DNA of 63,307 bases, counting the filler, from Octopus bimaculoides (lineage: Eukaryota), in NCBI RefSeq assembly GCF_001194135.2. It is 4 parts of 3 records of this genome, joined end to end, with 100 filler letters (N's around TTAATTAATTAA, not from the genome) between each part and the next. Parts side by side here need not be neighbours in the genome. Positions count along the whole stretch, not along the records: positions 43,594 to 62,173 come from NC_068982.1; 3 more parts are not named here. One strand, given 5' to 3'. Position 1 is the first letter of the stretch. Each line of letters opens with the position of its first letter. A program made the translations under genes and the position numbers. Below, one piece after another: positions 43,594 to 62,274 of this stretch. The notes under the pieces are model-generated. The model had not been told where the DNA came from. It made no database searches and worked only from the letters and a program-made list of their open reading frames with translations.

Positions 43594-43640
43594 ATCTTCA
43601 TCACCATCATCATCAACATCATCTTCATCCTCATCATCAT

Positions 43641-43672
<32 letters not shown>

Positions 43673-44330
43673 CTATCTTCATCCTCATCCTCATCACCAC
43701 CACCACTATCACCACCGCGACTACTTCCAACTTCGCGCCTACAACCACCACCACTATCATCATCACAACCGTCACCACCCTGAACACTGTCATCACCAAT
43801 ATCACCATCATCAAACTTCGCTAACACCTCAATCACATGACCACCTCAACAAGCATCATATGTCAAAACAACCTCCACACCGACCACTAAACATACCAAC
43901 AGAATTAGAACCACACATACATACATACATACATACATACATACATACATACATACATTCATACATGCATAATTACATACATACTTGCATACATAGACAC
44001 GCACAGACAAACACATACATACACACATGCATATATACATACGCACATACATACATACATAGATATTACACAAGACATTATTAGCACAACCACTAATAGC
44101 ATCTCCAATGCCACTCCTACTACCACCTCCACTTCTAGTACCAACATCACCACAGGCACTACTACCATAATGAATTCCACGCATCACCACTATCGTCATC
44201 ACTACCATTACCACATTGCTGCTGCTATCATCACCATGACCATCACTGCTGAGGCCACCACCACCGCCGATACCGCCACCACCACTGCAGCCTCCGTAGC
44301 AGCAGCAGCTGCAGCAGTCTCCGACATGTG
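43594..44330. repeat. (CAT)/(CAC)/(TACA) low-complexity block
   Basis: Mixed trinucleotide and tetranucleotide repeats read directly. Confidence 0.8.
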
Positions 44331-45174
44331 GTGCTCTGAAATCGAGTGAAAGATATCCATGTTGGAAGCTAGTTTCGTAGGTTGCTCACTGACGCGTGAC
44401 TACCACAGCAAAAATGGAATTTCCTAACTTATCAAGCCATGCGTGACATTACTGCAAAATTGGAAGAATATGAGTGTGGTAGCAATATAAACAGTACAAG
44501 ATTGGAGGTGTACGTGACAGTGGGGAGGAACATTCTTTAACTGGAACGGAAGAACATCCTGCATTGTATAAATAATACACTCTTAAATTATATTCGATGC
44601 ACTAGTATTCCCATAAGCATACACAGAGACAGACACATACTAGACAGTTAGAAAGTTACAAATAGACATATCTATCGACATAATACATACATTTTCATAT
44701 ATATATATATATGATATATATGTATGTTTTTAAAGTATGTAGGTGTGTGTGTATGTGTGTGTAAATAATAGATACTTAAGCACGTGGCTTTATAGATATA
44801 ATTGCAGTGTATTGTGTTTGTGTAAGTATGTATGTATGTTGTTTCTTTGAGTTTTTATTTAAATGCTTTAGATAGTTCAAGCCGGTTACTAACAAAACAA
44901 GACTTTTTGAGTTAAGAGAGTTCCTGGTGTTTGCAAATATGTAGTTGAGCTGGTGTGTTGGTTGAGTTGTCGATGCATACAACCAAGTGTCTGCATCTAT
45001 TCAGCTAAAGAATCTCAAGTGGAGAATCTTTGGAATATCTTTGAGATGTCTTAAAATCTTTGAATTGTCTTAAAGAATCTTTGAAATGTCTTACAAACCT
45101 CCACTGCTGCTAATAAATTGGATTTGGAGAACACGCCTCAATTACTTTTGCTCTTTCTACGAAAAACCTTAATA

Positions 45175-45480
45175 GGCAAAGGAGTGGCTGTGTGGTAAGT
45201 AGCTTGCTTACCAACCACATGGTTCCGGGTTCAGTCCCACCGCGTGGCATCTTGGGCAAGTGTCTTCTGCTATAGCCTCGGGCCGACCAAAGCCTTGTGA
45301 GTGGATTTGGTAGACGAAAACTGAAAAAAGCCTGTTGTATATATGTATNNNNNNNNNNNNNNNNNNNNNNNNNNNNNNNNNNNNNNNNNNNNNNNNNNNN
45401 NNNNNNNNNNNNNNNNNNNNNNNNNNNNNNNNNNNNNNNNNNNNNNNNNNNNNNNNNNNNNNNNNNNNNNNNNNNNNNNN

Positions 45481-45524
<44 letters not shown>

Positions 45525-45720
45525 TTTGTCCCCCCTACATCGCTTGACAACCGATGGTGGTGTGCTTATGTCCCTGTCATTTAGCGGTTTGGCAAAAAGA
45601 GACCGATAGAATAAGTACTAGGCTTACAAAGAATAAGTCCTGGGGTCGATTTGGTCGACTAAAGGCGGTGCTCCAGCATGGCCGCAGTCAAATGACTGAA
45701 ACAAGTGAAAGAGTAAAGAG
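45175..45720 (+). mobile_element. SINE family A, full length
   Basis: tRNA-like head GGAGTGGCTGTGTGGTAAG...GGTTCAGTCCC, then TTGGGCAAGTG, an internal microsatellite, and a tail ending GAAACAAGTGAAAGAGTAAAGAG. Confidence 0.92.
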
Positions 45721-45721
45721 T

Positions 45722-46360
45722 ATGTCTAGTCCTTTGTGTCAGTTTGTAGATACGTAGCCTGACGTACCTGTGATGATAGGTGCAAATGAACATTTGGAGT
45801 CAGAGTACAAGAGCTGTAAGTTCCGCATTAATTTGCTCCTTTTCCTGAATATTTGATTGTACATTCACATCCGTTGGGTAGCCGATCTCTACAACAGTGC
45901 ATGACTTTTGTTCTCTGTCCTACAGACCGATATGAGGTCTGTTATGCTTGCTCCGAATTGTTTTTATTGGAGCGTTCCACCAATATTCCTTGTTTTTAAA
46001 GGTGAGTGTACTTACTGGCTTCGACATGCCTTTGAGGTCCACGTAAAGGCAATCTTCCCTGTGGATAGCGTTATAAATAGTCTTTACAATTTTATTAAGC
46101 CTGAGGGCAGGTAGTATCCCGTAGTAGTTCTACTGTTGTGGGTTATATCTTCCACACTGGTATAGCAGAGCCGGCATTTTTTTTATCACACTTGGAGGTT
46201 TAGTGGTACATTTGTCCCTATTGTTTATCAGGAATTTAGTAGCTATCTCCTTTTCCTGGATGGCGATGGCATATCCTTTTAGATCGCAGGTCTAGGTGAG
46301 ACCACTCTTTCTGTCAATGCTGTTGTTATCCTCTAGCTTACAAGATATGTACTCATGCTT
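45722..46360 (-). mobile_element. RLE-type (R4-like) LINE C-terminal fragment, copy 1
   Basis: AIQEKEIATKFL, CRLCYTSVEDITH, KEYWWNAPIKT..KHNRPHI, VVEIGYPTDVNV and APIITGTSGY in broken frames. Confidence 0.85.
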
Positions 46361-46419
46361 TGCTTTTTGCTGGCATGATGCCTGCTTCTCCTCCAAGATT
46401 CTGTTTACGTAAGCCAGTA

Positions 46420-47082
46420 TATATGTAAGTATATATTTGTATGTATGACCTTATGAAGGTCTTGCAGATTTTTACTGTCCCAGATATCGTAACCATTTGC
46501 GGTGTATAAATTAAGGATTTGCATTCTCTCCACAAGAACACAATTTTAGCCATACTTTGCTCATGACGGGTTGGTATATATCCTGTTGCTCTAATTATAA
46601 TAAGTAGGAAGGTGAAATTAGGTACTGGATTTGCAAACTCCTTATCAATGTCCATAGATGTCCTCTTTCAATTGTATTTTTCGAACCACATTGCAGTCCA
46701 GAGGGCAGCTGATTTCCACGACAGAAAATATCCTTTTCTTGTGGTCCAACGCAACAATATCTTGCAGGTTGTGTTTTAACTTGGTGGCTTTTAAAATTTT
46801 TTAAAGTTCCACCTATATTCTTTTGACCCATCAGTCTCAACGTAGTCAACTTCATCTGTAGATGTTGTTTATTTTGTTATTCTGTTGCAGACTGTTTTGG
46901 TTATCGCATTATTCCTCATGAAAAGATAATATCTAGAAGACATTCTCTCCCAGTTGGCAATAGCGTGGTTGATGTCTTCAGTCTTGGTCTTGTACTGCCT
47001 ACATTTGTTGTCTGTCAATGTTTTCTGCTTTTTATGTTCTAAGTACTTGGTGGAGATCTCATGTACTTAAATTGCATGCAAG
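46420..47082 (-). mobile_element. RLE-type (R4-like) LINE C-terminal fragment, copy 2
   Basis: EISTKYLEHKK..DNKCRQYKTKTEDINH, MSSRYYL and LKHNLQDIVALDHKKRIFSVVEISCPLDCNVV. Confidence 0.85.
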
Positions 47083-47964
47083 TATGTATGTATATATGTG
47101 TATGGATGTGTGTATGTTATCCCTGCATGCAAATACACACTCATTTATGAACACCCTCACCTCAAACATACGCGCTTACACGCGCATATATATGTGTTTG
47201 TGCGTGTATGTATTTGGGTATGTATGCAGCCGATACAGATCCATATCATATTTGAGCCTTTGCTTATACATAAAAATACCCTGGAATATACATTATCCCA
47301 AGTCCCATGATACATGCAGCAAGATATTTACATGTGCTATCAAAAGTTTACGTTTACAAGGAAATGGATCTTCATCGGTTTCAGTGGTGAATAATGTAGA
47401 TATTTGTTGAACTGATGTACCTCCTCACTGAGTTATTATACATCTGTATGCCACACATTTGCGGGCCTTAATGCACTCGTTCGGCATATATCCATATGTG
47501 TGTGTGAGTGGTTAAATGTTAGTGTGTGCGTGCTCATGCGCGTCTGTATGTATGTGTGTATGTATATGAAGTATATATGAAAATATACAAACACGGAGAA
47601 ACGCACCCGGCAACTTCCGATGGACTAAGTTGCTAAACCGGTCTCTGAAAGCTTGACTCGCTGGGAAAGATGCATTCAGCTACCAGTATCCTATCTAGAT
47701 CGACTGTACAAAACTAAAATTTGTGGTCTGTGTAGCCGAAAAGTTTGAATTGCGGACACCTTATGCTACATCGATCTACAGGCCTACAAATTACTCTATC
47801 TAGATACGATCTGGAGGACACGATGCTGTCTGCCCATGTTCACATCGGTGCGTTCACAAAATCCATTCGGTACCTATCAGACTGTTAGAAGCACTTGAGG
47901 AGGTTTGTGAGGCTTTCGGCTAGCCCCATCCTATACCGGCGTGCGTCGAAGATGGCGTTCTAAT

Positions 47965-48126
47965 CTTTACATCGACCTCAGTGCTCAAATGGTACTTATT
48001 TTGTCACCCCACAAAGGATGAAAAGCAAAGTTGAGCCCGGACGCATTTGAACCTAGAACGTAAAAACAGACGAACTGTCGATAAACATTTTGCCTGGTGT
48101 GCTAGTGATTCTGCCAGACTACCGCC
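47965..48126 (-). mobile_element. SINE family B, decayed, followed by an (AAT)/(GAT) tract
   Basis: CACAAAGGATGAAAAGCAAAGTTGAGC...GATTCTGCCAGACTACCGCC. Confidence 0.8.
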
Positions 48127-48162
48127 TTAATAATAATGATGATAATGATGATGATATTGATG

Positions 48163-48238
<76 letters not shown>

Positions 48239-48257
48239 TGATGATGATGTTGATGAA

Positions 48258-48298
<41 letters not shown>

Positions 48299-48314
48299 TG
48301 ATGATGTTGATGAA

Positions 48315-48375
<61 letters not shown>

Positions 48376-48543
48376 TCGTATAGCCTAATTTTGTTTCACT
48401 ACATTGGTTTTCAATTAATTCCATAATATCTACTTGTTTGATGTATTTTCTTTTTTTTTTTTTGAATTTCTTTTAACTGAAAATATTTTATCTAATTCCC
48501 CACCCACATTTTCATTTCAAACGTATTATCGTTTTATTCAAAG

Positions 48544-48713
48544 GTTCTTTATATTCACTGAACCATGTGAACGAGGATGAAATGGAAACTACATCCAACA
48601 ATGAAATTCCACATAATGATGGTTTAAGTTCTGGATTAAAATCTTCTTCAAAAGACAGGAGAGAAGGAGAGAGGAAGGAGAAAGAGAGAGCAAGCGAAAG
48701 AGAGGGAGAGTGA
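48544..48713 (+). CDS. Candidate cytoplasmic-tail exon of the cadherin
   Basis: First AG after an AG-free, pyrimidine-rich zone of about 158 nt. The phase-1 frame reads SLYSLNHVNEDEMETTSNNEIPHNDGLSSGLKSSSKDRREGE...*. It needs an intervening phase 2-to-1 exon, and the AAG acceptor is suboptimal. Confidence 0.4.
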
Positions 48714-48829
48714 AGGAGAGAGGAAGGAGAAAGAGAGAGCAAGCGAAAGAGAGGGAGAGTGAAGGAGAGAGGAAGGAGAAAGAGAGAGCAAGCGAAAGAG
48801 CGGGAGAGTGAAGGAGAGAGAGAGAGAGA
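48663..48829. repeat. 49-bp purine-rich tandem repeat running into a gap
   Basis: CAAGCG recurs at 48691, 48740 and 48789 (period 49). Confidence 0.9.
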
Positions 48830-49400
48830 NNNNNNNNNNNNNNNNNNNNNNNNNNNNNNNNNNNNNNNNNNNNNNNNNNNNNNNNNNNNNNNNNNNNNNN
48901 NNNNNNNNNNNNNNNNNNNNNNNNNNNNNNNNNNNNNNNNNNNNNNNNNNNNNNNNNNNNNNNNNNNNNNNNNNNNNNNNNNNNNNNNNNNNNNNNNNNN
49001 NNNNNNNNNNNNNNNNNNNNNNNNNNNNNNNNNNNNNNNNNNNNNNNNNNNNNNNNNNNNNNNNNNNNNNNNNNNNNNNNNNNNNNNNNNNNNNNNNNNN
49101 NNNNNNNNNNNNNNNNNNNNNNNNNNNNNNNNNNNNNNNNNNNNNNNNNNNNNNNNNNNNNNNNNNNNNNNNNNNNNNNNNNNNNNNNNNNNNNNNNNNN
49201 NNNNNNNNNNNNNNNNNNNNNNNNNNNNNNNNNNNNNNNNNNNNNNNNNNNNNNNNNNNNNNNNNNNNNNNNNNNNNNNNNNNNNNNNNNNNNNNNNNNN
49301 NNNNNNNNNNNNNNNNNNNNNNNNNNNNNNNNNNNNNNNNNNNNNNNNCCAACTCAAAAAACAGAGCAAGAACGAGGCTTTGCGAGATAACTAAATATAT

Positions 49401-49599
49401 ATTGCAGCGTGGAAGGTGTTTATAAGCCATTTAAAATAACACACAAAAACCGTGCTGCAGCACAGAATTTTGTCAGTGAACAGGTCGCGGTCTCAAAGCG
49501 ACGAAAATATTTTGACAAATTAAATTTAAATGTTGAAGCGAATCTAACGGTTTTTGTGTGTTATTTTAAATGGCTTATAAACACTTTCCACACTGCAAT
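49401..49599. mobile_element. Family F3: element with 53-bp terminal inverted repeats and an internal hammerhead fold
   Basis: 49401-49453 and 49547-49599 are reverse complements with two mismatches, and a 12-bp palindrome GTGCTGCAGCAC lies at 49452-49463. Confidence 0.88.
49469..49519 (+). ncRNA. Minimal type-I hammerhead-like motif with G3-C8 swapped core (F3)
   Basis: TTTGTCA-GTGAACA-G-GTCGC-GGTCTCAAA-GCGAC-GAAA-A-TA-TTT-TGACAAA: 7-bp stem I, 5-bp stem II, AATATT palindromic stem III, UUU triplet. Confidence 0.65.
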
Positions 49600-49759
49600 T
49601 GTTTTCGTTCCAGCACACGATCTCAGATCAGGTCACTTGCTATGCAAGTACATCTCCGTAAATATATATTAAATGTGCAATAATTCTGACCATTACAGCA
49701 AATATTATATTATAACTGTTAGTTACTTATAATCGGTTGTATGTATATGTTGTTGTTTG

Positions 49760-49962
49760 TGCTTATGTTTGTCCCACCCACCATCGCTTGACAACCGATG
49801 TTGGTGCGTTTAGATCCCCGTCACCTAACGGTTCGGGAAAAAGACCGATAGAATAAGTACTGGGCTTACAAAGAATAAGTCCTGGGATTGATTTATTCGG
49901 CTAAAGGTGGTGCTCCAGCATGACCGCAGTCAAATGACTGAAAAAAGTAAGAGAGTAAAAGA
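49760..49962 (+). mobile_element. SINE family A, 3' half
   Basis: CCATCGCTTGACAACCGATGTTGG...GACCGATAGAATAAGTAC...GCAGTCAAATGACTGAAA. Confidence 0.9.
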
Positions 49963-50054
49963 GTAATATATATATATATGTATTATTTATTGTTATTATT
50001 TAATTGAACGCCACGCATCCATTTCCAAGTAAGTGTATATATATATGCTTTTAT

Positions 50055-50427
50055 TTTTTATTCTTTTATATGTTTCAGTCATTTGACTGCGGCCATGCTG
50101 GTGCACCGCCTTTACTCGAGCAAATCGACCCCAGGACTTAATGCTTGTAAGCCTTGTACTTATTCTATCGGTCACTTTTCCCGAACTACTAAGTTACGGA
50201 GACGTAAACACACCAGCATCGGTTGTCAGCGATGTTGGGGGAACAAACACAAACACACAATCAAACACACACACACACACATACACACACATATATATAT
50301 ATACACACGACGGGCTTCTTTCAGTTTCCGTCTACCAAATCCGCTCACAAGGCTTTGGTCGGCTCGAGGCTATAGGAGAAGACACTTGCCCAAGTTGCTA
50401 CGCAGTGGGGCTGAACTCGGAACCATG
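50055..50427 (-). mobile_element. SINE family A, near full length
   Basis: TTTCAGTCATTTGACTGCGGCCATGCTGG...GACACTTGCCCAAG...CTGAACTCGGAACCATG. Confidence 0.9.
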
Positions 50428-50520
50428 CATTATATTATGTATTATTTTATTCTTTTATACGTTCCCGGTACTGAAATATTCCTGGCTTTGGGTGAAAGAA
50501 AATACAGGCGGATGATACAG

Positions 50521-50702
50521 TTCTATATTTAAGAGATGAGGAATTACGTACATTATTTGCATTATTTACAATTGACGGATATTTGCCCTCACCTTGTTTG
50601 TTGTTAACACAACGTTTCGGCTGATATACCCTCTAGTCTTCATCAGGTGTCTTGGGGTTCGAAATTTCCCCAAGACACCCGATGAAAGCTGGAGGGTATA
50701 TC
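50521..50702 (-). mobile_element. F1 tail and hammerhead (minus) joined to an inverted partial copy (plus)
   Basis: 50521-50657 is the reverse complement of the F1 3' half. 50658-50702 reads TTCGAAATTTCCCCAAGACACCCGATGAAAGCTGGAGGGTATATC on the plus strand. Confidence 0.88.
50606..50651 (-). ncRNA. Minimal hammerhead (F1) with intact core and damaged stem II
   Basis: Minus strand reads GACAC-CTGATGA-A-GACTA-GAGGGTATAT-CAGCC-GAAA-C-GTT-GTGTT, with two A.C mismatches in stem II. Confidence 0.65.
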
Positions 50703-52607
50703 GCGAGGTTTTTTTGGAATGTAACACTCGCGATAGTAGAGGGCTTACTGTGTCTGGAATGATTGATAAGATAGAAACGTTTAAGAAGATTGGCATGACA
50801 TTTGGTGTTCCTCTTTCAGGAAGGGAGATAAATGTTATTGACAAAATCATATGAAATTATTTCAAATCTATAAGATTCATCTGTAAATACTTCAACTAAA
50901 ATTGTTTGTATTACTTTTATTTCCCTTTTTTTTACATACAAAGAAAATAGACTTCGACATATCTTGCTGTGTTATAAAGCTACAATAATTTCACAAATTG
51001 TAGGTTAAATGCCGGTTAAATACAGAATTCAAACAGGGAAAATTCAAGTAATTAATTTGCAACTGTTTAGATGAATGTATTTGTGAAAATTTTCATCTAT
51101 AAGTCAGTTAGATAATTTATGTTGTAAAAATATTATGGACAGCATTCATAAATGTTTTCGTGTTTCCGTGTCAATGGGATAATTTATGCTGTCAAGTTTC
51201 ATGTGTGCAAACAGATAACTGGCTATCTTACAAAGAAAAAAAATTCGGTTAAACGTACACATATTTATTGGCAGAAATTCCTTTTCAAACTACGTCAAAG
51301 TAAAAGTTAGCTTGCTCTTAAGAGAGTGCACAGCGAGCAGAATAACAACCGATGCATGATTGCTGTCAGAATTTAAAATCCGGCACAGTAAATAGATGTG
51401 TTTATGTCGAACGAATGACGCCACACGAAAAAAGATAGAGGTGAATAAATTTTCAAGTAAATTTACAGGTAGATTAGGCTTCCCTAGTTACTAGTCTCTG
51501 ATTGGTTAAACCAGAACGTGTTATGAGATCGAATTAAAATGGCAGCAGTCGAAATGGCGTCGCTACAAATATACATACCACTAATATGAATCTCAACGAG
51601 GTCGCTTCACAGTTAGAAAGAGACATAAAATAGAAAGAGAGAGCATATCGAGTAAAGGAGTCCAAGATAAACTATGAATGAAGTAAAGACGAAATGGTCA
51701 TCACCAGAATTTCTTTTCTCACATAGTCACCTGCTAACTTTCAAAGATATAAAGATACAAAGGTTTAAGTACTGGTGATAAGATTTTAGCTAGAAAGGCG
51801 ATTATAAATGTACATGCGCGCACATAGACACACACAGAATCCAGATATTGGAACAAAAATTTATTATGGTAATAAAGCAATATGCATAGTAGTAAGTTTT
51901 ATAAAGATCACTCGAAATGACTGTAAAATAGAGCTACTATATTAGGTAAATAAAATTTAATGTTTTGTCACTAAGATAGAGATTACAAAAGAGCGGTGAA
52001 TGAACTTCCAATTCGTAAATGAAGTCTCTCAGTTATGTGTAGCAAAATTAGACTGAGAAACTAAAGTAACTCTATTGCCAGAATCAGAAGTGAAAAATAA
52101 GCAGCAGAAACGAAAGAATGTTGTGCCAACTGTGAACGACAACATTGCATCAATAAATATATCAGCAATTGTTTGGTAATCTTCCAATGTGCTACAACAC
52201 TGCCAAAACAGTCAATAAATCAAACAGTTGATATGGAAATATTGTTGTAGTGGAAGAAATTATAGACCAAACTAGAAGTCACGTGATTAATGTCAGTATT
52301 GGAAATGATTTATGTGATACACACTGAATTGGTGGCACGGGGAATTGTGACACAACACCATGATACAGCACTACGACACGTCCCTGTAAGACAGCCCTAT
52401 ATGATTGTATTGTGAGTGTATAGACCGACGCTGTTATATTGTAGTGTCACTGTTACCGTTGACTGTACGTTACCGTTGACTCTACGACACAGCGCTATGT
52501 CAAAGCACTTCGATATAACGCTGCACCATCACAATGTTACCTTATAATGTTGCATTGAACCTCTTCTCCATGACATTGTACCTTGATACGTATTGGTATA
52601 CACAACC

Positions 52608-52637
<30 letters not shown>

Positions 52638-52658
<21 letters not shown>

Positions 52659-53654
52659 AACTTCACGAAAGAGGGAAGAAAGGGAGAAGTAGCACACAAA
52701 CAGGTGCGAGTGTTAGTATGAACGCTAACACCGCCACCACCACCACCACAACTACAAATGTTACCACCATTACAACTACCAACAACAACAACAACAAAAA
52801 CAAGGACGCAAGGTCATCCGCCACGAATATCTCTGCTAATACAAACACTGTCTTCACCACTGCTACCACCACTACCGCCGCCACCACCACCACCACCACA
52901 ACAACAAACACGAACTTTGTCGAGGCTTTGAAACCAAGGAAAGAAATAATGAATTTCACGAAAGAGGAGTTACTCGAATGCAAAAGTATGCTCACCAAAA
53001 ACGATATAACAATCCATCTACAGACACCCACAGACATTACAAAAACATTGCAAAAAGAAAAAAAAACAATTATTTATAAAACGCTCAACACAAAAACAAA
53101 GACTCCAGAAAAATTTAGTCAGGAAAATGTCGAGAGATGTTTAAGGCCCATATGGGCTTTTAAAAACTACATTACGAGGGGAAACAGGTTCGCAACAATC
53201 GAAGTGATATTCGACAGCGAACAGCGAGCCAGGGACCTCTCCACAAAGTCATTTCAACATGAAAACCTGCTCATGATCCCTACGTACCTTGGTCGTAGGG
53301 TGACAAAAATAAAAAACATCCAATTTGCCTCCTGAAATTGAAGTAAAATGGCTCGTATCGGTCATATGTTACGACATAGAGGAGGAAATAAATATTTTAG
53401 AAGTCACTGCCCCGGACCATGAAAACTGGATTGGCCAGGAAATTCAACTTCTTGTACAAGTTGATCCAGCCAATTACGAAAAGATTTCTCACAGAATCCA
53501 ATTAACAGAGGATTCGAGCTTCCGTGTTGCCGTCGAAGGCAGAAGGTCAAGTTGCTACGTTTGTAGTAGCAAAACTCACTTAAGATGCCCAGTAGCTCAG
53601 GAGCAAAGGCAACAACAACGTCAACAACAAAACCAAGAAAAACAACAACAATAA
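52638..53654 (+). pseudogene. Non-LTR retrotransposon ORF1-like protein (L1/Tx1-like; RRM-like region plus CCHC knuckle), one frameshift near 53310-53330
   Basis: Thr/Asn-rich leader, then ITRGNRFATIEVIFDSE...IPTYLGRRVTKIK / PPEIEVKWLV...FRVAVEGRRSSCYVCSSKTHLRCP. No splice structure and no ORF2 follows. Confidence 0.7.
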
Positions 53655-54304
53655 CCACAAGAAAACCATAAACAGAACAAAAAGCCAGCATTACTGCCCA
53701 CACCGCCATATACACAACTGGTTAAGCAGCTGTACAAAGAAATGCAGAAACGCCAACAACCAGCAGGCCATAAAATGCATTGTTCGGAGCGGAAGCTATA
53801 GTGGTAGCCCTTATTACACGCATACTGTTGAAACAAGGCTAAAAGCAAGAAAGCAAGTGGTTTCTATACATACATACATACATGCATGCATACATGTGTA
53901 TATATATCGCACACACACGCGCATGAAAGTGGGTATCCTGTTAGAACATAGAATACTACGATAGATATGGAGAGAAGCATCTGCTAATGATATTAAAACG
54001 AGTGCTTATATGCACCTCAAATCTATACGAGAGTTTCTCTCATGTTAGCTGTCATATTATTCTGTTCTAACACATCTACTTTATGTGGGGATATATATAT
54101 ATATATATATANNNNNNNNNNNNNNNNNNNNNNNNNNNNNNNNNNNNNNNNNNNNNNNNNNNNNNNTCCCCCTCTCTCACATTTCCTGACCTTCTATTCA
54201 TGCACACTTTCCCTCCTCTTTCACTTCACTCTGTCCATTTCATTTTTTGCTCGCCCCTCCTTAATTCTTCTATCCCTCTGCCTCTACCTCTCTCTCTCTC
54301 TCTT

Positions 54305-54790
54305 CTCTCCCCACGTGACTAGTGTTCGGCCAAGCCTGGCCTTTCTTTCTTAGTTCGACTACCATCCGTGCAACATCTATATTCCTCCCTGTGCCTGTCA
54401 AACCATATGTCCCTGCCGTAAAGCTTTACTTCCACACACGCCAACTTAATTTAATTCGTCCTTAGTCTAAAGACACCTGTTGTTATATCCTGTTATTTGC
54501 ATTTGTATTCGTGTACCATTTCTCCGTTTATTTTCCGTCCTTGTTTTCGTATACATCCGCTGCTTTCTTCCAAGGAATCTAATGTTCTTAGCTTAGTTTT
54601 TCCTTGGGGCTGGCCAGATTGGAGCAATCTCCAGTATAACCAGCCGAAATTGGAAAGATAATCTGGAACTCGACTGAAGAAAGAACTCTGAATGACCCGT
54701 CCTTGTTTTCTTTGTATCGCCTATCTGGATATTTTCTTATCCCTTTTTTTGTATCACCTGTCTGTCTGGGTGTTTTTTTTGTGGATATAT
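54305..54790 (+). mobile_element. Unclassified dispersed repeat (family F4); related to 13470-13560, 58978-59165 and 59795-59970 on the minus strand
   Basis: AATCTGGAA..T.GACTG....GA...GAA.GACCCGTCCTTGTTTT is shared with the reverse complement of 13483-13545. 58978-59165 and 59795-59970 are direct repeats of each other; their link to this copy is weaker. Confidence 0.45.
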
Positions 54791-55210
54791 ATATACACCC
54801 ATCTATATATACCTATCTAGGTAGTGGGTCGGGGGCTGTGTTTGTGTGTGGTTTTAAATAGCTATCAACAATATTTAAATTAAGTTGAGTAGAATTAACT
54901 GCATGACGTTAGCGGAACTTTGATGAAATTGTAAATCATCAAAAATATGTAAATATATGTAAAGCTATAAAATCTTTATTTGAAATCCACGTCCACGCAT
55001 AACTCTGTCTGCTCTTACGACGAAAAGCAGTTGGAATTTCAACTTTAATTATATAATTTACATAAAATATTGTTTTGTGCTGTTGTAATGCTACATGTGA
55101 AAAAAAAACAACATTTACTTTTGTCTTGTGCAATGCAAGTTTCACTCAAAGTAATGTTGAAGACTGCTATGATATTCTACATATTCTGATGTGTCAATGT
55201 TTCATTTATA

Positions 55211-55375
55211 TTTGAGTTCAAATTCAGACACGATCGACTTTGCCTTTCATCCCTTCAGGGTCGATTAAATAAGTACCAGTTACGCACTGGGGTCGATGCA
55301 ATCGACTAAATCCCATTGTTTGTCCTTGTTTGTCCCCTCTATATTTAGCCCCTTGTGGGCAATAAAGAAATAAAT
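55211..55375 (+). mobile_element. SINE family B, 5'-truncated
   Basis: GAGTTCAAATTC...GACTTTGCCTTTCATCCCTTCAGGGTCGATTAAATAAGTACCAG. Confidence 0.85.
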
Positions 55376-56282
55376 ATTTCATTTATATAAATGTTGCAGA
55401 AATGCATTTACTTCTTGTCAATTCCGGCATTTACTTCTTGTCAATTCTGAGTTTACAGTTAACCAACCTCGCCTCATTGGCGTATTTCTACTGTATGATG
55501 ATAATAGCGTATTTACATTCTGGGATTTTGCTGTCTCTGCAATGTATTGAAAATGCAGTTTCTCTGTTCTGTCATCGCTGAGTATCTCTATTCTCTTATT
55601 GCTTATACTCTCTATTTCATTTAATTAAACTGCCGTCTAAAATTCTATTGATATATTCTTGGCATTAATGTTGTTATCAAACTTCCCTTCTAGCCAATAT
55701 CTTCACTGCAATAACTATTAAGAACTGTGTTTCTTCTTTTGCTTTTGTTGTTGTTGTTGTTGATAATGATAATGATGACGATGAAGACGACGGCGACCAC
55801 GATGATGACAACATTGATGGTGTTGTTGATGATGATGAAGATGATAATGATAATGATAATGATGGTGATGTTGATTATGGTGATGATGTTGAACGTCAAT
55901 GTTTCTGTGATCGTTGAATAGTGTAATTGACGCTATAGCGGTCGTTAAACCTTCTTATATTTTATGAAATAAATATTGGAGAAATATTCTTGATAAAACG
56001 TAATGTTGACCTCCTGGACTATTTTTCACCCTTGCCACGACCCATGTCATTGACGCCAGTGTTTTTATAAAGAAAATCTATGATTGTGTGTAATACTTAA
56101 ATATTAGTGCCGTTATGTGAAGCTGTAGGACATTAACTATAGCAGCACTTACTGATCTCTCATCTATACATGTCCAGCCTACATTATCGATTAGAGTTTG
56201 CACTTAACTCTACACACTACTTCGCTTGCTAAATTAATAACCTTATTCGTAGCATTACATTGAGTTTATTATTATAATTATA

Positions 56283-56317
<35 letters not shown>

Positions 56318-56379
56318 CATTATTATTATTATTATTATTATTATCATTATTATTATTATTATTATTGGTATTATTGTCA

Positions 56380-56744
56380 TGGTGGCGAGCTGGCAGAATC
56401 GTTAGCAAGCCGGGCAAGACGCTTCGCGGCATTTCGTCTGTCTCCACGTTCTGAGCTGAAATTCGACCTGGGTCGATTTTGCTTTTCATCATTCGGAGTC
56501 GATAAAATAAGTACCAGCTGAATACTGAGGCCGATGTAATCGAATTAACCCCTCCTCCGAACTTGCTGGCCTTGTGCCAAACTTTGAAACAATTATTATT
56601 ATTATTGTTATTGCGAGCTGGCAGAATCGTTAGCATACCGGACAAAATGCTTCGTGGTATTTCGTCTGTATTTACGTTCCGAGTTCAAATTCCGTCAAGA
56701 TTGGCTTTGATTTCTATCCTCTCGGTGTCGATAAAATAAGTAGC
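56380..56744 (+). mobile_element. Two tandem SINE family B copies
   Basis: GCGAGCTGGCAGAATCGTTAGCA begins near both 56385 and 56613. Confidence 0.88.
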
Positions 56745-57510
56745 ATTCTCGGTGACTCCTGGGGTTTATTCACACCGCGTCTTTACATTTTGTTGGCCAT
56801 GATTTCCACAGAGCTCCCAATGGTTCATTCTTGCCGCATTATCATGTCGTCTTTTGTATTCACGTTGTGCCAGTTTCGGGCATTCGCTAACGATGTGCCA
56901 TGCCGTTTCACCCCTCTCACCACTCATTCTGTCTTTGTCAGTAGTGCTGTCGGTAGTGTTGTCGATTCTGCACTTCACATAGTTAGTCCTTAATGTTTGT
57001 TCTTGTGCTGCGCATATAAGTGCTTCTGTCTCTATCTTCAGGTCACTCCTCATCAGCCATAGCAACCGGTCGTCTGTATCTCTCTTGACGTTGGTATCTC
57101 TTGCAAACTGACCGTAAATGTCTTTCTCCTTCCATGCTGTTTCTTTTTTATGTTCCTTTCCTCTTTAAGTTTTCTTTCTTTACACAATTATCAGTTTTAA
57201 TGACCCTGGGCTTCTTCACATGTTTCAATAATGGTTCCACGGTATATTTTACATACTACCCCGAGCTGTTTTTCTCTGTTTCGACACAATCCTGACAGCT
57301 GATCTAACCTCTCTCACTCTTTCTTGTGGACAAGTGCAGCCTAAGGTGAAAGTCTCCGTACACTGTCAATATCTTTCTTGTCTTCCTATTCATGTTCATC
57401 AGTTCTTTCTTTTGCCAGTTAATGAGTCCAACTCCATACCAAAGTGATGCCCATGTATTAACTGCTTGGATTTTATTCCATCCGACAGTTTTGAGCGCAC
57501 GTCTATTTGT
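56745..57510 (-). mobile_element. R4/Dong-like LINE fragment (thumb to zinc knuckle)
   Basis: NKIQAVNTWA...NRKTRKILTVYGDFH and SDLKIETEALICAAQEQTLRTNYVKCRID...GETAWHIVSECPKLAQREYKRRHDNAARMNHWELC. Confidence 0.9.
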
Positions 57511-57863
57511 ACGTCCTTAGTGTGGCCTTTAGCTGTACAGGATGCTAGTGTACAATAGCAGTGCTATCCTAGATGTAAGAGTAATGCACTATTGGGAGCC
57601 TCACCTGAGTTTGTAGAATATCAGTAACTGCTGGGAAGGAAGTTTCTTCTAGCCACGAAGAAAAAGACCAGTCATTTGGATGTATTTCTAGCTTTATGAA
57701 GTATGAGCTTTCGAAACTATGACAGAAGACGAAGAAATAGTTCAGGTGTTGATTATAGGCAACTAACGCGAATAAAGTTTTATATGAAACAAGTGTAAAT
57801 TATGTTTAAAAAAAGGGCATATATTACTGGTTGATAGAAGTTATATTTCTTACATGGTATAGG

Positions 57864-57894
<31 letters not shown>

Positions 57895-58812
57895 NNNNNN
57901 NNNNNNNNNNNNNNNNNNNNNNNNNNNNNNNNNNNNNNNNNNNNNNNNNNNNNNNNNNNNNNNNNNNNNNNNNNNNNNNNNNNNNNNNNNNNNNNNNNNN
58001 NNNNNNNNNNNNNNNNNNNNNNNNNNNNNNNNNNNNNNNNNNNNNNNNNNNNNNNNNNNNNNNNNNNNNNNNNNNNNNNNNNNNNNNNNNNNNNNNNNNN
58101 NNNNNNNNNNNNNNNNNNNNNNNNNNNNNNNNNNNNNNNNNNNNNNNNNNNNNNNNNNNNNNNNNNNNNNNNNNNNNNNNNNNNNNNNNNNNNNNNNNNN
58201 NNNNNNNNNNNNNNNNNNNNNNNNNNNNNNNNNNNNNNNNNNNNNNNNNNNNNNNNNNNNNNNNNNNNNNNNNNNNNNNNNNNNNNNNNNNNNNNNNNNN
58301 NNNNNNNNNNNNNNNNNNNNNNNNNNNNNNNNNNNNNNNNNNNNNNNNNNNNNNNNNNNNNNNNNNNNNNNNNNNNNNNNNNNNNNNNNNNNNNNNNNNN
58401 NNNNNNNNNNNNNNNNNNNNNNNNNNNNNNNNNNNNNNNNNNNNNNNNNNNNNNNNNNNNNNNNNNNNNNNNNNNNNNNNNNNNNNNNNNNNNNNNNNNN
58501 NNNNNNNNNNNNNNNNNNNNNNNNNNNNNNNNNNNNNNNNNNNNNNNNNNNNNNNNNNNNNNNNNNNNNNNNNNNNNNNNNNNNNNNNNNNNNNNNNNNN
58601 NNNNNNNNNNNNNNNNNNNNNNNNNNNNNNNNNNNNNNNNNNNNNNNNNNNNNNNNNNNNNNNNNNNNNNNNNNNNNNNNNNNNNNNNNNNNNNNNNNNN
58701 NNNNNNNNNNNNNNNNNNNNNNNNNNNNNNNNNNNNNNNNNNNNNNNNNNNNNNNNNNNNNNCACACACACACAAACACCCCCCCCCCACACACAAACAC
58801 ACATATATATAG

Positions 58813-58970
58813 GACGGGCTTTTTTCAGTTCCCGCCTACCAAATCTACTCACAAGGCTTGGTCGGCCCGAGGCTACAGTAGAAGACATTTGTCCAAGGTG
58901 CTACGCAATGGGACTGAACCCCGAACTATGTGGTTGGTAAGCAAGCTATTTACCACCGAGTCACTCCTGC
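58813..58970 (-). mobile_element. SINE family A, 5' half
   Basis: CTACCAAATCTACTCACAAGGCTTGGTCGGCCCGAGGC...GGGACTGAACC...CACTCCTGC. Confidence 0.88.
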
Positions 58971-59974
58971 ATATATCAAAAGTTAGACAAACAAAGGAAA
59001 AATAGCCGAAAACTGGGCGAAAACATAACAGACAGACAAGGGAGACAAGAATACGATACAAGGAACATTCGCAGCTGACTTTCTCATCAATTGGTTTCTG
59101 AGACGTCTTAGTGGTTTCACACTATCTGAAACCAAAACCACTGTTATCTAACGAGAACACCAGAGCATAGAGCTACAGCAAAAAGCTGACTAATGTGTGC
59201 GAGGACATGACGAAATAACATTGCGTGTACAATAAGAAATAACAAGATCTAACATAAGGAAATATAGAATATAGAATAGAAAATGCTTTACGGCTGAACT
59301 ATAAGCAAAAGAATAATTATACTATACAATATTAAAGCAATACAATACAAACAGGAAAAAGACTTTTCGGCTATCAAGAGAGATGTAGTGAGGTAGCGCA
59401 AAGAAATGGAAAATGTCCGTGAGGGACGGAACACAAACGTATCTGATTTGGCCAGTAGGAGGCCGAAAAAGAACGACGCACTTTGACTAGACACCGGCCA
59501 CGTGGTAGGAGAGAGGAGAGGTGATGGAAGGACTAAGGAATGACAGAGGGAAAGAGAGAGGCAGAAGGGTAAGAGAGAGAGAGGCAGAAGGGTCAGAGAG
59601 AGAGAGAGGCAGAAGGGTAAGAGAGAGAGGAGAAAGAACAGGGTCCAAGGGAGACAATTAAGGGGGAGGGGAAAAAAGAGAGAAGAAATAGGAGAGGAAG
59701 AAAGAGCTAAAGAGTCGCACTACAAATATTCAGAGAATATCTTTTACAGTTAAGTAAATAAGCGGGGGTGCATTGTGCTGTAATAAATATTTCAAAAGTT
59801 AGACAGAGAAGGGAAAAATAGACGGAAACTGGGAGAAAACATAACGGACAGAAAAAGGAGACAAAAACACTATACAAGGATCATTTGCAGCTAATTTTCT
59901 CATCAGTTTGTTTCCGAGACGACCTAGTGGCTCCACGTTATTTAAAACCAAGACCACTGCTATGTAATGGGAGC

Positions 59975-60006
<32 letters not shown>

Positions 60007-60495
60007 NNNNNNNNNNNNNNNNNNNNNNNNNNNNNNNNNNNNNNNNNNNNNNNNNNNNNNNNNNNNNNNNNNNNNNNNNNNNNNNNNNNNNNNNNNNNNN
60101 NNNNNNNNNNNNNNNNNNNNNNNNNNNNNNNNNNNNNNNNNNNNNNNNNNNNNNNNNNNNNNNNNNNNNNNNNNNNNNNNNNNNNNNNNNNNNNNNNNNN
60201 NNNNNNNNNNNNNNNNNNNNNNNNNNNNNNNNNNNNNNNNNNNNNNNNNNNNNNNNNNNNNNNNNNNNNNNNNNNNNNNNNNNNNNNNNNNNNNNNNNNN
60301 NNNNNNNNNNNNNNNNNNNNNNNNNNNNNNNNNNNNNNNNNNNNNNNNNNNNNNNNNNNNNNNNNNNNNNNNNNNNNNNNNNNNNNNNNNNNNNNNNNNN
60401 NNNNNNNNNNNNNNNNNNNNNNNNNNNNNNNNNNNNNNNNNNNNNNNNNNNNNNNNNNNNNNNNNNNNNNNNNNNNNNNNNNNNNNNNNNNNNNN

Positions 60496-60539
<44 letters not shown>

Positions 60540-61952
60540 CACACACACACACACACACACATATAAATATATGCATATATATACATGTATATAGGCATCT
60601 CTCTCTCTCTATAAATTGTAGTGTGTATATTCTGTAAACTTGAATTACAATTATAATTTCTTTTACTGTCCTCGTGACTGACGTTTAGCTTCTGTATTTA
60701 GCTTAGCTTCTCTCTTTTGTCATGAAGTGTAACATTATTTATCTTCCAGGATCACTTATTAGTCACATCATTCTCTGAAAACTGCCTTAATCTATTTACA
60801 TTGCAGCTGTTTAATATGTGACTGACAATTAGATTAGACAATTTCCACCTGATTTGCCAGGTATATATGGACATTTCGCAGCAGCTTTCTTCTGCTGGTG
60901 TATTCCGTTAGATGAGCGTAGTTTATCAACTTCTCCATATACACTCATCTAAGACATTGTGTAAGGCAGTTTCTGTTCTCAACATCGTGAGTGCCAGGAT
61001 ATTTATTGAGGTCGTTTAGAGCTAAACTCGTCCTCATAATTAGATTTTTCTTTCAAGTGGTGCTACTATCTCAACTTAATCTTCAAAGCTGCATTCTGTA
61101 TTTCAATATTTCAATTTCTGGAGTTGGTGCTAACACGAATTTATGCTTCCTCTCTAGTCTAAAGACTTTATAACAGAGTTATTACACTAGCCTAATAGAT
61201 TTTTTTTACACAGGGACTCTCAATCATACACAAGAGTGTGAACGACACAGTTGAGATAATATGAGGCGTAATGTGTATATATGTCTGTGGGTGTGTATGG
61301 ATGTGTCATGTGTGTCTCGTGAGTGTCGCACGCGCGTGTGTATGTGTGTGTGTGTGTGTGTGTGTCCTGTGTGTGTGTGTGTGTGTGTGCCTTATGATCT
61401 GTGAAACGGAATTGAGTTTTAGTCAGTTGGTTTAGCAAATTTCTAGTGAAGAAAAAAGATTTCAAAGAAAATTCCACAACCAAAAGTTAATAGAAAATGG
61501 CATGGCATGAACTTATAGAGGAAGAAAATTAATAATCAAACAAGTAGATTTAATAGTTTTTTTCTCCTTCAATATACTATGTCAGAAAACAAAGAATAAA
61601 ATAAAGAAAAAGAAGATAACATCTAACTCTCATTGCTAAAACCATTGCAGTGCACCTATCACTGTCAATAAAAGTATGTCTTTTTAAAACAATCATCTCA
61701 CACGTCAGACAGATGTCACCCTTTTCCTCATTTTCTGCATGAACTTCTCTTTTCTTCTCGAAATTAAAGAAAATGGCTCCCGGCAATCTGTATAATGTCG
61801 TGGCAACAGTGAAGAAATGTATGATATGTCTCCTTAAATCATTGTCAACAGCACAGCATTCTGGGATAAATTGTGGGTGATATTTGTTATCACATACATG
61901 TGTCCAACTGTACGAATCTACAAGCTCTGTGTGAGTGGCGTGTGAACGTGTA

Positions 61953-61990
<38 letters not shown>

Positions 61991-62274
61991 AGTGTGTGTA
62001 TGTGTGTAAGCTTGTGAATATTTAAATGCGTGTCTACTGAAACATCAGTCGGTGTGTTTGTATATACGTTTGTATGTGCATAAATGTATAAATGCTAATA
62101 TATCTATATCTATATGTGTGTGCGTGTATGTGTGTGTGTTTGTGTGTATGTGTGTGTATATATATTTGTATGTNNNNNNNNNNNNNNNNNNNNNNNNNNN
62201 NNNNNNNNNNNNNNNNNTTAATTAATTAANNNNNNNNNNNNNNNNNNNNNNNNNNNNNNNNNNNNNNNNNNNNT

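What the first reader, a model, noticed from the sequence alone, without database searches (positions are those of the whole stretch)
49401..49599. Hammerhead fold with a compensatory G3-C8 core swap hidden inside an apparent MITE
Seen: TTTGTCA-GTGAACA-G-GTCGC-(9 nt)-GCGAC-GAAA-ATATTT-TGACAAA. Stem I (7 bp), stem II (5 bp), GAAA and an AATATT palindrome all sit in exact hammerhead register, but the core is GUGAACA rather than CUGANGA. Established: positions 3 and 8 form a Watson-Crick pair in the active hammerhead, and swapping both rescues activity, so a standard CUGANGA search would miss this motif. An extra base after A9 is tolerated naturally, as in the CChMVd plus-strand hammerhead. The central palindrome GTGCTGCAGCAC and the CCGT at the arm end suggest an originally fully palindromic element whose left arm lost its ribozyme by microhomology deletion (inference). 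UUU is an allowed but weak NUH triplet.
Basis: partly seen in the sequence, partly recalled or inferred. Interest (0 to 1): 0.9.

Follow-up and report, generated by a model that had tools for sequence, protein, structure and literature searches.

The report
Hammerhead-like hairpin in palindromic octopus repeat
A 199-base inverted-repeat element in octopus-like DNA carries a hairpin that fits the blueprint of a self-cutting hammerhead RNA with a swapped core base pair. It looks more like a broken piece of a Penelope-type retroelement than a DNA-transposon MITE, and whether it cuts is untested.

Summary
Two 53-nt inverted arms (96% complementary) enclose a 51-nt hairpin: stem I 7 bp, GUGAACA, one bulged G, stem II 5 bp, GAAA, AAUAUU palindrome, U17.

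No Rfam hammerhead model matches it, even when only 75 nt are searched at E<=10.

It does fit a descriptor that recovers the experimentally active Penelope-like-element (PLE) hammerhead of Anolis. None as good appeared in 40 Mb of composition-matched random sequence. That extrapolates to about 4e-5 per piece and about 6 per octopus-sized genome.

The element is a decayed perfect palindrome of a 142-nt unit. The left arm lost 85 nt at a GT microhomology.

The layout resembles a PLE insertion more than a MITE:
- The motif-sense 3' ends point outward.
- Both junctions read ATT|GCAG.
- The predicted cut lies 84-87 nt from an AC-rich 3' end (82-89 nt in the Anolis PLE).
- There is no convincing target-site duplication.

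No other copy could be reached, so conservation of G3-C8 is untested. Folding also predicts a G3·U17 mispair and a very weak helix III.

The hammerhead reading is plausible but unproven, and the MITE label is doubtful.

The parts
49401..49599 (.). Whole inverted-repeat element (199 bp), a decayed perfect palindrome
   Evidence: I1; fold -101.2 kcal/mol, z = -15.4
49401..49453 (.). Left arm. It is the reverse complement of the last 53 nt of the unit, with 2 transitions relative to the right arm (49408 C/T in a CpG, 49415 G/A).
49547..49599 (.). Right arm (last 53 nt of the unit)
49452..49463 (.). 12-nt perfect palindrome GTGCTGCAGCAC, with symmetry centre at 49457|49458. It marks the head-to-head junction of the two unit copies. 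The left copy lacks 85 nt, with a GT microhomology at 49452-49453.
   Evidence: (I5)
49458..49599 (+). 142-nt repeat unit that carries the hammerhead-like motif in sense orientation, with its 3' end pointing outward
   Evidence: (the unit alone keeps stems I and II, p >= 0.9)
49469..49475 (+). Stem I, 5' strand (positions 2.7-2.1), UUUGUCA
   Evidence: I19
49476..49482 (+). Core strand GUGAACA: G3 U4 G5 A6 A7 C8 A9 (canonical is CUGANGA)
49483..49483 (+). Unpaired G between A9 and G10.1, the bulge usual in PLE hammerheads
49484..49502 (+). Stem II (GUCGC / GCGAC, 5 bp, G10.1-C11.1) with 9-nt loop GGUCUCAAA
   Evidence: (pair probability 0.99)
49503..49505 (+). G12 A13 A14
49506..49511 (+). AAUAUU palindrome: A15.1, A15.2, UA, U16.2, U16.1. 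Helix III is possible only between two copies. The palindrome extends to 10 nt (AAAAUAUUUU, 49504-49513).
   Evidence: I13; self-duplex -0.2 kcal/mol; 10-bp register -4.6 kcal/mol
49512..49513 (+). U17 and U1.1. The predicted scissile bond lies between 49512 and 49513.
   Evidence: register read; untested
49513..49519 (+). Stem I, 3' strand (1.1-1.7), UGACAAA
   Evidence: I19
49580..49596 (+). AC-rich 3' terminal stretch ACACUUUCCACACUGC, 84 nt downstream of the predicted cut. Candidate start site for reverse transcription.
   Evidence: compared with PAc
49401..49403 (+). ATT at the left junction. The right junction 49597-49599 reads ATT on the minus strand. This trinucleotide may come from the target rather than the element.
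   Evidence: (PAc endonuclease cuts 5'-ATT-3' on both strands)

Best explanation
The apparent MITE is most likely a dead insertion made of two head-to-head, 5'-truncated copies of the 3'-terminal 142 nt of a Penelope-like retroelement (PLE), or of a non-autonomous PLE derivative. One copy was later shortened by an 85-nt microhomology deletion.

The unit carries a PLE-type 'minimal' hammerhead. It has stem I, a core with one bulged base before stem II, GAAA, and a short palindrome in place of a closed helix III. Its C3-G8 pair is replaced by G3-C8.

In the master element's multimeric transcript, two such motifs would pair through the AAUAUU palindrome to build helix III. Each would then cut after U17, which corresponds to 49512|49513 here.

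This genomic copy is a passenger relic. It has no same-strand partner and is not expected to cleave efficiently on its own.

Shown: the sequence anatomy, the palindrome and deletion history, the descriptor fit and its rarity in random sequence.
Inferred: PLE ancestry, the twin-priming origin, and any catalytic activity.
For: 1. The motif fits the same descriptor that recovers the experimentally active PAc PLE hammerhead: bulged base after A9, palindromic helix III, stems I and II (using File S1). It is the only hit in the piece. No hit as good occurred in 40 Mb of composition-matched random sequence.

2. PLE hammerheads typically have an unpaired base at the 5' end of stem II and a small palindromic helix III, act as dimers, and already show a natural 3-8 covariation, U3-A8 (PMC4209133).

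3. The C3G/G8C mutant partly restores cleavage in the PAc hammerhead.

4. PLE insertions often carry an inverted 5'-truncated copy that forms inverted repeats (PMC8557442). Pairs of minimal hammerheads on opposite strands 100-700 bp apart are reported. Here the motif-sense 3' ends point outward from a perfect palindrome centre.

5. In PAc the endonuclease cuts 5'-ATT-3' in AT-rich DNA on both strands and extends both. Reverse transcription starts in an AC-rich stem-loop 111-118 nt into the ORF, which is 82-89 nt after the hammerhead cut. Here both junctions read ATT|GCAG on their own strand, the left flank is ATATATAT, the 3' end is AC-rich, and it lies 84-87 nt after the predicted cut. That is 113-116 nt after the start of stem II.

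6. There is no convincing target-site duplication.

7. The DNA is octopus-like: a neighbouring gag-like ORF is 81% identical to an Octopus bimaculoides protein. Cephalopod genomes hold Penelope elements and 235 Rfam Hammerhead_1 loci in the giant squid (PMC6962438).
Against: - No Rfam hammerhead model matches, even at E<=10 on 75 nt.
- Only one copy is available, so neither family membership nor fixation of G3-C8 could be tested.
- No RT, GIY-YIG or other PLE coding remnant was found in the 20 longest open segments of the piece.
- There is no start codon at stem II, unlike PAc.
- Stem I (7 bp) is longer and stem II (5 bp) shorter than the published PLE minimal consensus of 4-5 and 7-8 bp.
- A perfectly symmetric palindrome centre is not what two independent truncations predict.
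- The PAc-specific distances and the ATT preference come from one lizard element and may not generalise.
- I noticed the matches after reading that paper.
- The G3·U17 wobble (p = 0.67) and the 10-nt AAAAUAUUUU register would disfavour the active fold.
Confidence: 0.45

Rival explanations
1. It is a non-autonomous DNA element, either a MITE or foldback-type palindromic repeat or a local fold-back duplication. Its internal hairpin resembles a hammerhead only by coincidence and there is no ribozyme. If transcribed, the element simply forms a long hairpin.
For: - The anatomy is classic MITE-like: 199 bp, 53-nt terminal inverted repeats at 96%, AT-rich, no coding capacity, fold of -101 kcal/mol.
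- Its only Rfam similarities are to MITE-like plant miRNA hairpins, far below their gathering scores.
- No hammerhead model matches.
- Two of the seven bases of the CUGANGA core strand differ from consensus, there is an insertion, and helix III is not closed.
- About 6 equally good chance hits are expected per 2.7-Gb genome even in random sequence, and more in hairpin-rich repeats.
- The finding was selected by a reader who was looking for such motifs.
- DNA transposons are abundant in cephalopods.
- The reconstructed 284-nt ancestor would never expose the motif: pair probabilities for stems I and II are 0.
Against: - There is no convincing target-site duplication.
- There is no second copy in 16.5 kb.
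- The chance expectation for this one piece is only about 4e-5 before inflation.
- Coincidence must also cover the bulge position, the palindromic helix III, the motif orientation, the 84-87-nt spacing to the end and the ATT junctions, all of which match PLE biology.
Confidence: 0.35
2. One reading: a true cut-and-paste MITE that carries a functional G3-C8 hammerhead as part of its own biology.
For: It draws on the same motif evidence as the best explanation and on the terminal inverted repeats.
Against: - Hammerheads are documented in retroelements, satellites and RNA replicons, where an RNA intermediate is processed. A DNA transposon has no obvious use for one.
- In the perfect-palindrome ancestor the motif is fully sequestered.
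- There is no target-site duplication.
- There is no partner on the same strand for dimer formation.
Confidence: 0.07
3. The relevant function, if any, belongs to the whole palindrome. A 199-nt near-perfect hairpin transcript would be processed into small RNAs (siRNA- or miRNA-like), and the apical hairpin is just the loop region.
For: A very stable hairpin, z = -15.4. cmscan aligns it to long-hairpin miRNA families MIR841, MIR8562 and MIR1435.
Against: The scores of 29-51 bits are far below the gathering thresholds of 94-211, and the families are from plants, so the similarity is in shape only. There are no expression data. This reading does not explain the core match.
Confidence: 0.08

Closest known systems
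Minimal (dimer-acting) hammerheads of Penelope-like elements, e.g. Poseidon_Ac (PAc) of Anolis and the min-HHRs of Cervera & de la Pena 2014
   Same: - One unpaired base between A9 and stem II.
- GAAA followed directly by a short palindrome instead of a closed helix III.
- Stems I and II only.
- Located about 85 nt upstream of an AC-rich element 3' end.
- AT-rich target with ATT at the junction.
- Inverted truncated copies.
- Natural covariation at positions 3-8 is known (U3-A8), and the engineered G3-C8 mutant is partly active.
   Different: - The core pair is G3-C8. I found no natural report of it in two full-text searches of open-access papers.
- Stem I is 7 bp against 3-5 bp, and stem II is 5 bp against 6-8 bp.
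- The palindrome is AAUAUU against ACGU or AU.
- The cleavage triplet is UUU.
- There is no ORF start at stem II.
- No RT/GIY-YIG ORF or tandem pLTR is in reach.
Canonical metazoan type-I hammerheads (Rfam RF00163; Schistosoma, newt and non-LTR retrozymes)
   Same: Open helix I of 6-7 bp, helix II of 4-5 bp beginning G-U-C, and helix III of 1-2 bp capped by a 2-4-nt palindromic loop that works in dimers.
   Different: - Not detected by the Rfam model at any threshold.
- No recognisable contact between loop 1 and loop 2.
- Swapped 3-8 pair and an extra base.
- Not in a tandem array.
CChMVd plus-strand hammerhead (extra A between A9 and G10.1)
   Same: It tolerates one extra nucleotide at the same place (De la Pena & Flores 2001, as cited).
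   Different: It is a viroid type-III hammerhead with closed helices I and II, a canonical C3-G8 pair and tertiary loop contacts.
MITEs and foldback elements
   Same: Small size, long terminal inverted repeats, AT-rich, non-coding, hairpin-forming.
   Different: No target-site duplication. No second copy seen. The ancestor was a zero-spacer perfect palindrome of a 142-nt unit.
Twin-priming inversions of non-LTR retrotransposons (L1); comparison from my own knowledge
   Same: A 5'-truncated retroelement insertion with an inverted segment, made by priming on both target strands.
   Different: L1 twin priming joins different parts of the element. Here both arms are the same 3'-terminal segment and meet at an exact symmetry centre.

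Membership tests
Hammerhead ribozyme | Conserved core U4 G5 A6 ... A9 and G12 A13 A14 in register between helices I, II and III | tested here: met
   GUGAACA at 49476-49482 and GAA at 49503-05 lie in exact register, with one bulged G at 49483.
Hammerhead ribozyme | C3 and G8 (a Watson-Crick pair in the active fold) | tested here: inconclusive
   The identities are not met (G3, C8), but pairing potential is kept. The engineered swap is only partly active. Whether the swap is fixed in a family could not be tested because only one copy is available.
Hammerhead ribozyme | A15.1-U16.1 pair and H17 (not G) at the cleavage site | tested here: met
   A at 49506, U at 49511, U17 at 49512. The triplet is UUU.
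Hammerhead ribozyme | Three helices meeting at the core (helix III present) | tested here: not met
   In a monomer, helix III would be 2 bp with a 2-nt loop, which cannot form. It can form only between two copies, and the AAUAUU self-duplex is -0.2 kcal/mol. This is the normal state of PLE and many metazoan hammerheads, but no same-strand partner exists here.
Hammerhead ribozyme | Match to a curated covariance model (Rfam hammerhead families) | tested here: not met
   There was no hammerhead hit at E<=10 on 18.6 kb, 302 nt or 75 nt. Whether these models detect PLE-type minimal hammerheads at all could not be calibrated.
Hammerhead ribozyme | Covariation or conservation of stems and core across homologues | not testable with these tools
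   No other copy was found in the piece, in JGI metagenomes, IMG/VR, GTDB genomes or the protein collection.
Hammerhead ribozyme | Site-specific Mg2+-dependent self-cleavage | not testable with these tools
   This needs an experiment. Folding predicts a competing G3·U17 pair at p = 0.67.
Penelope-like element (PLE) or a non-autonomous derivative | RT plus GIY-YIG ORF, or tandem pLTR arrangement | tested here: not met
   Pfam found no RT, GIY-YIG or transposase domain in the 20 longest open segments of the piece. There is no tandem copy. A 5'-truncated fragment would not be expected to keep them.
Penelope-like element (PLE) or a non-autonomous derivative | Hammerhead motif a fixed short distance upstream of the reverse-transcription start (the element's 3' end), in sense orientation | tested here: met
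   The distance from cut to end is 84-87 nt, against 82-89 nt in PAc. The motif sense points to the outer ends. The comparison rests on a single reference element.
Penelope-like element (PLE) or a non-autonomous derivative | AT-rich target or ATT cleavage, and inverted 5'-truncated partner copies | tested here: met
   Junctions read ATT|GCAG on both strands, the left flank is ATATATAT, and the arrangement is a head-to-head palindrome. ATT cannot be told apart from being part of the inverted repeat itself.
MITE | Terminal inverted repeats, small size, no coding capacity | tested here: met
MITE | Target-site duplication | tested here: not met
   The best candidate is ATT(G), 3-4 nt, and it needs asymmetric ends. 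That is not above chance for the 64 boundary combinations tried.
MITE | Multiple dispersed copies sharing the same ends | not testable with these tools

The most novel reading that the evidence does not exclude
Octopus genomes harbour a family of Penelope-derived, possibly non-autonomous, retroelements. Their dimer-acting hammerhead has fixed a G3-C8 core pair in place of the near-universal C3-G8. This would be a natural instance of the laboratory 'rescue' double mutant, invisible to CUGANGA-based searches and to Rfam models.
Probability: 0.3. Interest if true: 0.55.

Novelty: new variant of a known kind. Interest (0 to 1): 0.4.

Why it matters
If a family with a fixed G3-C8 core exists, three things follow.
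- Evolution would have used the C3-G8 pair of the hammerhead active site as a swappable Watson-Crick pair in more than one way (U3-A8 is already known).
- Standard descriptor and covariance-model searches would be under-counting hammerheads in animal genomes.
- Cephalopod Penelope-type elements would be added to the ribozyme-bearing retroelements.

It would also show that some short "MITE-like" palindromes in draft invertebrate genomes are twin-primed retroelement ends, which matters for repeat annotation.

If the motif is a coincidence, the case is a useful calibration. A very good descriptor match, about 4e-5 per 16.5 kb in random sequence, is still expected a few times per large genome.

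Tried and rejected
1. Rfam cmscan at E<=10 on the whole piece, on 302 nt and on 75 nt found no hammerhead. The only hits were long-hairpin plant miRNA families far below threshold, and (TG/TA)n false miRNA hits elsewhere.

2. Other copies in the piece: a mismatch-tolerant pattern search and blastn with word size 7 found none. The only match was a 34-nt, 82% GT-rich stretch at 54838-54870, which does not extend.

3. A six-frame translation of the element searched against 5.8 billion proteins gave 616 word candidates, none significant.

4. Exact-pattern scans with two different patterns:
   - The 22-nt arm pattern found nothing in JGI metagenomes or GTDB genomes.
   - The core and stem II pattern found nothing in IMG/VR. 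In JGI metagenomes it gave two GC-rich bacterial chance matches without stem I, which I rejected.

5. Reaching the same genome through repeat proteins:
   - RT-fragment homologues are 50-68% identical, and all but one come from ENA contigs.
   - The two contigs fetched share no nucleotide similarity with the piece.
   - The Octopus bimaculoides UniRef homologue is not on record with DNA.

6. Pfam on the 20 longest open segments found no RT, GIY-YIG or transposase domain.

7. RNAcofold cannot represent the double hammerhead, because the pairs cross. I therefore estimated only the helix III duplex energy and the competing registers.

8. Lunse et al. 2017 on PLE hammerhead dimers is not held in the library. 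The supplements of Cervera 2014 are not held either.

9. An assembly artefact is unlikely. The arms differ by two substitutions and an 85-nt deletion, which a read-through or hairpin-adapter artefact would not produce.

10. Decay from a canonical C3-G8 copy by two independent transversions is unlikely at about 2% divergence per arm. This is my inference.

Full report
**What is there.** The piece (43594-62173) is AT-rich, gap-ridden draft eukaryotic DNA full of microsatellites and short repeats. A neighbouring gag-like ORF is 81% identical to an uncharacterised Octopus bimaculoides protein, so a cephalopod origin is credible.

At 49401-49599 two 53-nt arms are 96% complementary.
- Stem I: 49469-75 with 49513-19.
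- Core GUGAACA: 49476-82.
- An extra G: 49483.
- Stem II: 49484-88 with 49498-502, and a 9-nt loop.
- GAA: 49503-05.
- AAUAUU: 49506-11.
- U17: 49512.

RNA folding gives exactly stems I and II for the 61-nt motif (-14.5 kcal/mol, z = -2.6). It keeps them inside the -101 kcal/mol hairpin of the whole element. Their pair probabilities are 0.9-0.99 in every present-day context.

**Is it more than chance?** I wrote a descriptor with these parts: N3-UGA-N-N8-A with any Watson-Crick 3-8 pair, a 0-1 nt bulge, stem II, GAAA, a palindromic helix III, H17 and stem I.
- It hits the piece once, at this site.
- As a positive control it recovers the experimentally active hammerhead of the Anolis Penelope-like element PAc from the published consensus: C3-G8, bulged U, stem I 3 bp, stem II 6 bp, ACGU palindrome.
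- In 40 Mb of first-order-Markov sequence of the piece's composition there were 14 hits with stems >=3 bp, one with stems >=5 and >=4 bp, and none with stems >=7 and >=5 bp.
- Extrapolating at 0.385 per extra base pair gives about 4e-5 expected per piece and about 6 per 2.7-Gb genome.

The true chance rate is therefore higher by an unknown factor. A single instance cannot be proven non-random, but it is not a trivial match.

**What speaks against a working ribozyme here.**
- None of Rfam's hammerhead models reports the site, even with only 75 nt searched at E<=10. I could not calibrate whether those models see stem-III-less PLE hammerheads at all.
- Helix III cannot form in a monomer, because it would be 2 bp with a 2-nt loop.
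- The AAUAUU self-duplex is about -0.2 kcal/mol.
- The palindrome actually extends to 10 nt (AAAAUAUUUU). In a dimer that register would pair A13, A14 and U17 and destroy the core.
- G3 pairs with U17 in 67% of the ensemble, extending stem I across the scissile site. This is analogous to the inactive C3-G17 conformer discussed for hammerhead variants (PMC3884650).
- There is no second motif on the same strand within the piece.

**History of the element.** The left half (49401-49457) is exactly the reverse complement of 49458-49599 with 85 nt missing between two GT dinucleotides. It also has two transitions in the arms.
- The ancestor was therefore a 284-nt perfect palindrome of a 142-nt unit, with its centre at 49457|49458 inside GTGCTGCAGCAC.
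- In that ancestor the hammerhead stems have zero probability. Any ribozyme function must belong to the source element, not to this locus.

**MITE or retroelement?** No convincing target-site duplication exists. No second copy is visible. Published Penelope-like element (PLE) biology fits the anatomy closely:
- PLE hammerheads usually have an unpaired base at the 5' end of stem II and a small palindromic helix III. They act as dimers, occur mostly as single motifs in truncated copies or as pairs on opposite strands, and include a natural U3-A8 covariant (PMC4209133).
- PLE insertions often carry an inverted 5'-truncated copy (PMC8557442).
- For PAc, the endonuclease cuts 5'-ATT-3' in AT-rich DNA on both strands and extends both. 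Reverse transcription starts in an AC-rich stem-loop 111-118 nt into the ORF, which is 82-89 nt beyond the hammerhead cut. The C3G/G8C double mutant is partly active (PMC11167929).
- Here the motif-sense 3' ends point outward, both junctions read ATT|GCAG on their own strand, and the left flank is ATATATAT.
- The 3' end (ACACUUUCCACACUGC) is AC-rich. It lies 84-87 nt beyond the predicted cut and 113-116 nt beyond the start of stem II.

Several caveats apply. These parallels rest on one reference element and I noticed them after reading it. ATT cannot be told apart from being part of the inverted repeat. No RT or GIY-YIG remnant is nearby. Stem lengths differ from the published PLE consensus. 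An exact symmetry centre needs template switching or fold-back rather than two independent truncations.

**What could not be done.** The decisive test is whether other copies keep the stems and G3-C8. It was out of reach:
- Nothing related was found in the piece, in JGI metagenomes, IMG/VR, GTDB genomes or the protein collection.
- The octopus genome is not available through the contig look-up.

**Verdict.**
- Observation: confirmed.
- Interpretation: partly supported. The hairpin is a genuine, statistically unusual fit to the PLE-type hammerhead blueprint with a G3-C8 swap, but it is unvalidated by homology or experiment.
- The element is more likely an inverted pair of truncated Penelope-like ends than a cut-and-paste MITE.
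- A natural G3-C8 hammerhead family would be a new variant of a known kind. That is moderately interesting rather than revolutionary, since U3-A8 covariation and the engineered G3-C8 rescue are already known.

Noticed in passing
window 45530-45722 (+), 49774-49979 (+), 50037-50181 (inverted), 45218-45348 / 50297-50427 / 58788-58859: There are several 80-90% similar copies of a short SINE-like repeat, usually adjoining (TG)n/(TA)n tracts. One inverted pair (49835-49979 and 50037-50181, 81%, 57 nt apart) starts only about 240 nt downstream of the element. Inverted pairs of short repeats therefore recur at this locus (D10, D12, D14, I10-I12).
   Followed up: partly
window 56766-57065 (-): An open segment encodes the C-terminal part of a non-LTR retrotransposon RT. 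Its homologues, nearly all on ENA contigs, are 50-68% identical and some carry Pfam zf-RVT (PF13966). Pfam itself gives no hit on the window copy.
   Followed up: partly
window 52574-53651 (+), two frames: A gag-like ORF is interrupted by a frameshift and carries a CX2CX4HX2C-like knuckle. It is 81% identical over 48% of the query to Octopus bimaculoides protein A0A0L8H9F3, which is the only tool-based clue to the organism. It has no Pfam domain.
   Followed up: partly
window 48659-48830, next to the gap 48830-49348: A GA-rich tandem repeat with a 49-nt period (three 97-100% copies) runs into the 519-N assembly gap, which ends 52 nt upstream of the element. What lies in the gap is unknown and could matter for the element's context (D8).
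   Followed up: no
window 48090-48420 and 56255-56395: There are long imperfect (AAT)n/(ATT)n microsatellites in inverted orientation 8 kb apart. They produce the poly-Asn, poly-Leu and poly-Ile pseudo-ORFs in the ORF list (D3, I1).
   Followed up: no
window 43906-44056, 47072-47593, 60516-60628, 62058-62173: cmscan hits to mir-297, mir-3149, mir-1277 and mir-568 all lie on (TG/TA/CATA)n low-complexity DNA, far below the gathering scores. They are false positives.
   Followed up: yes
window 54838-54870: A 34-nt stretch is 82% similar to the inner part of the element's arm (GTTTTTGTGTGTTATTTTAAATGGCTTATAAACA). The similarity does not extend on either side. It is either chance in GT-rich DNA or a very old fragment of the same family.
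   Followed up: partly
window 49391-49669 (+): One reading frame stays open for 93 codons across the whole element, including the stretch from the start of stem II to the unit's 3' end. In PAc that region is the N-terminal coding part of the PLE ORF. Here there is no ATG and no protein homologue, and open segments of this length are common in the piece.
   Followed up: partly
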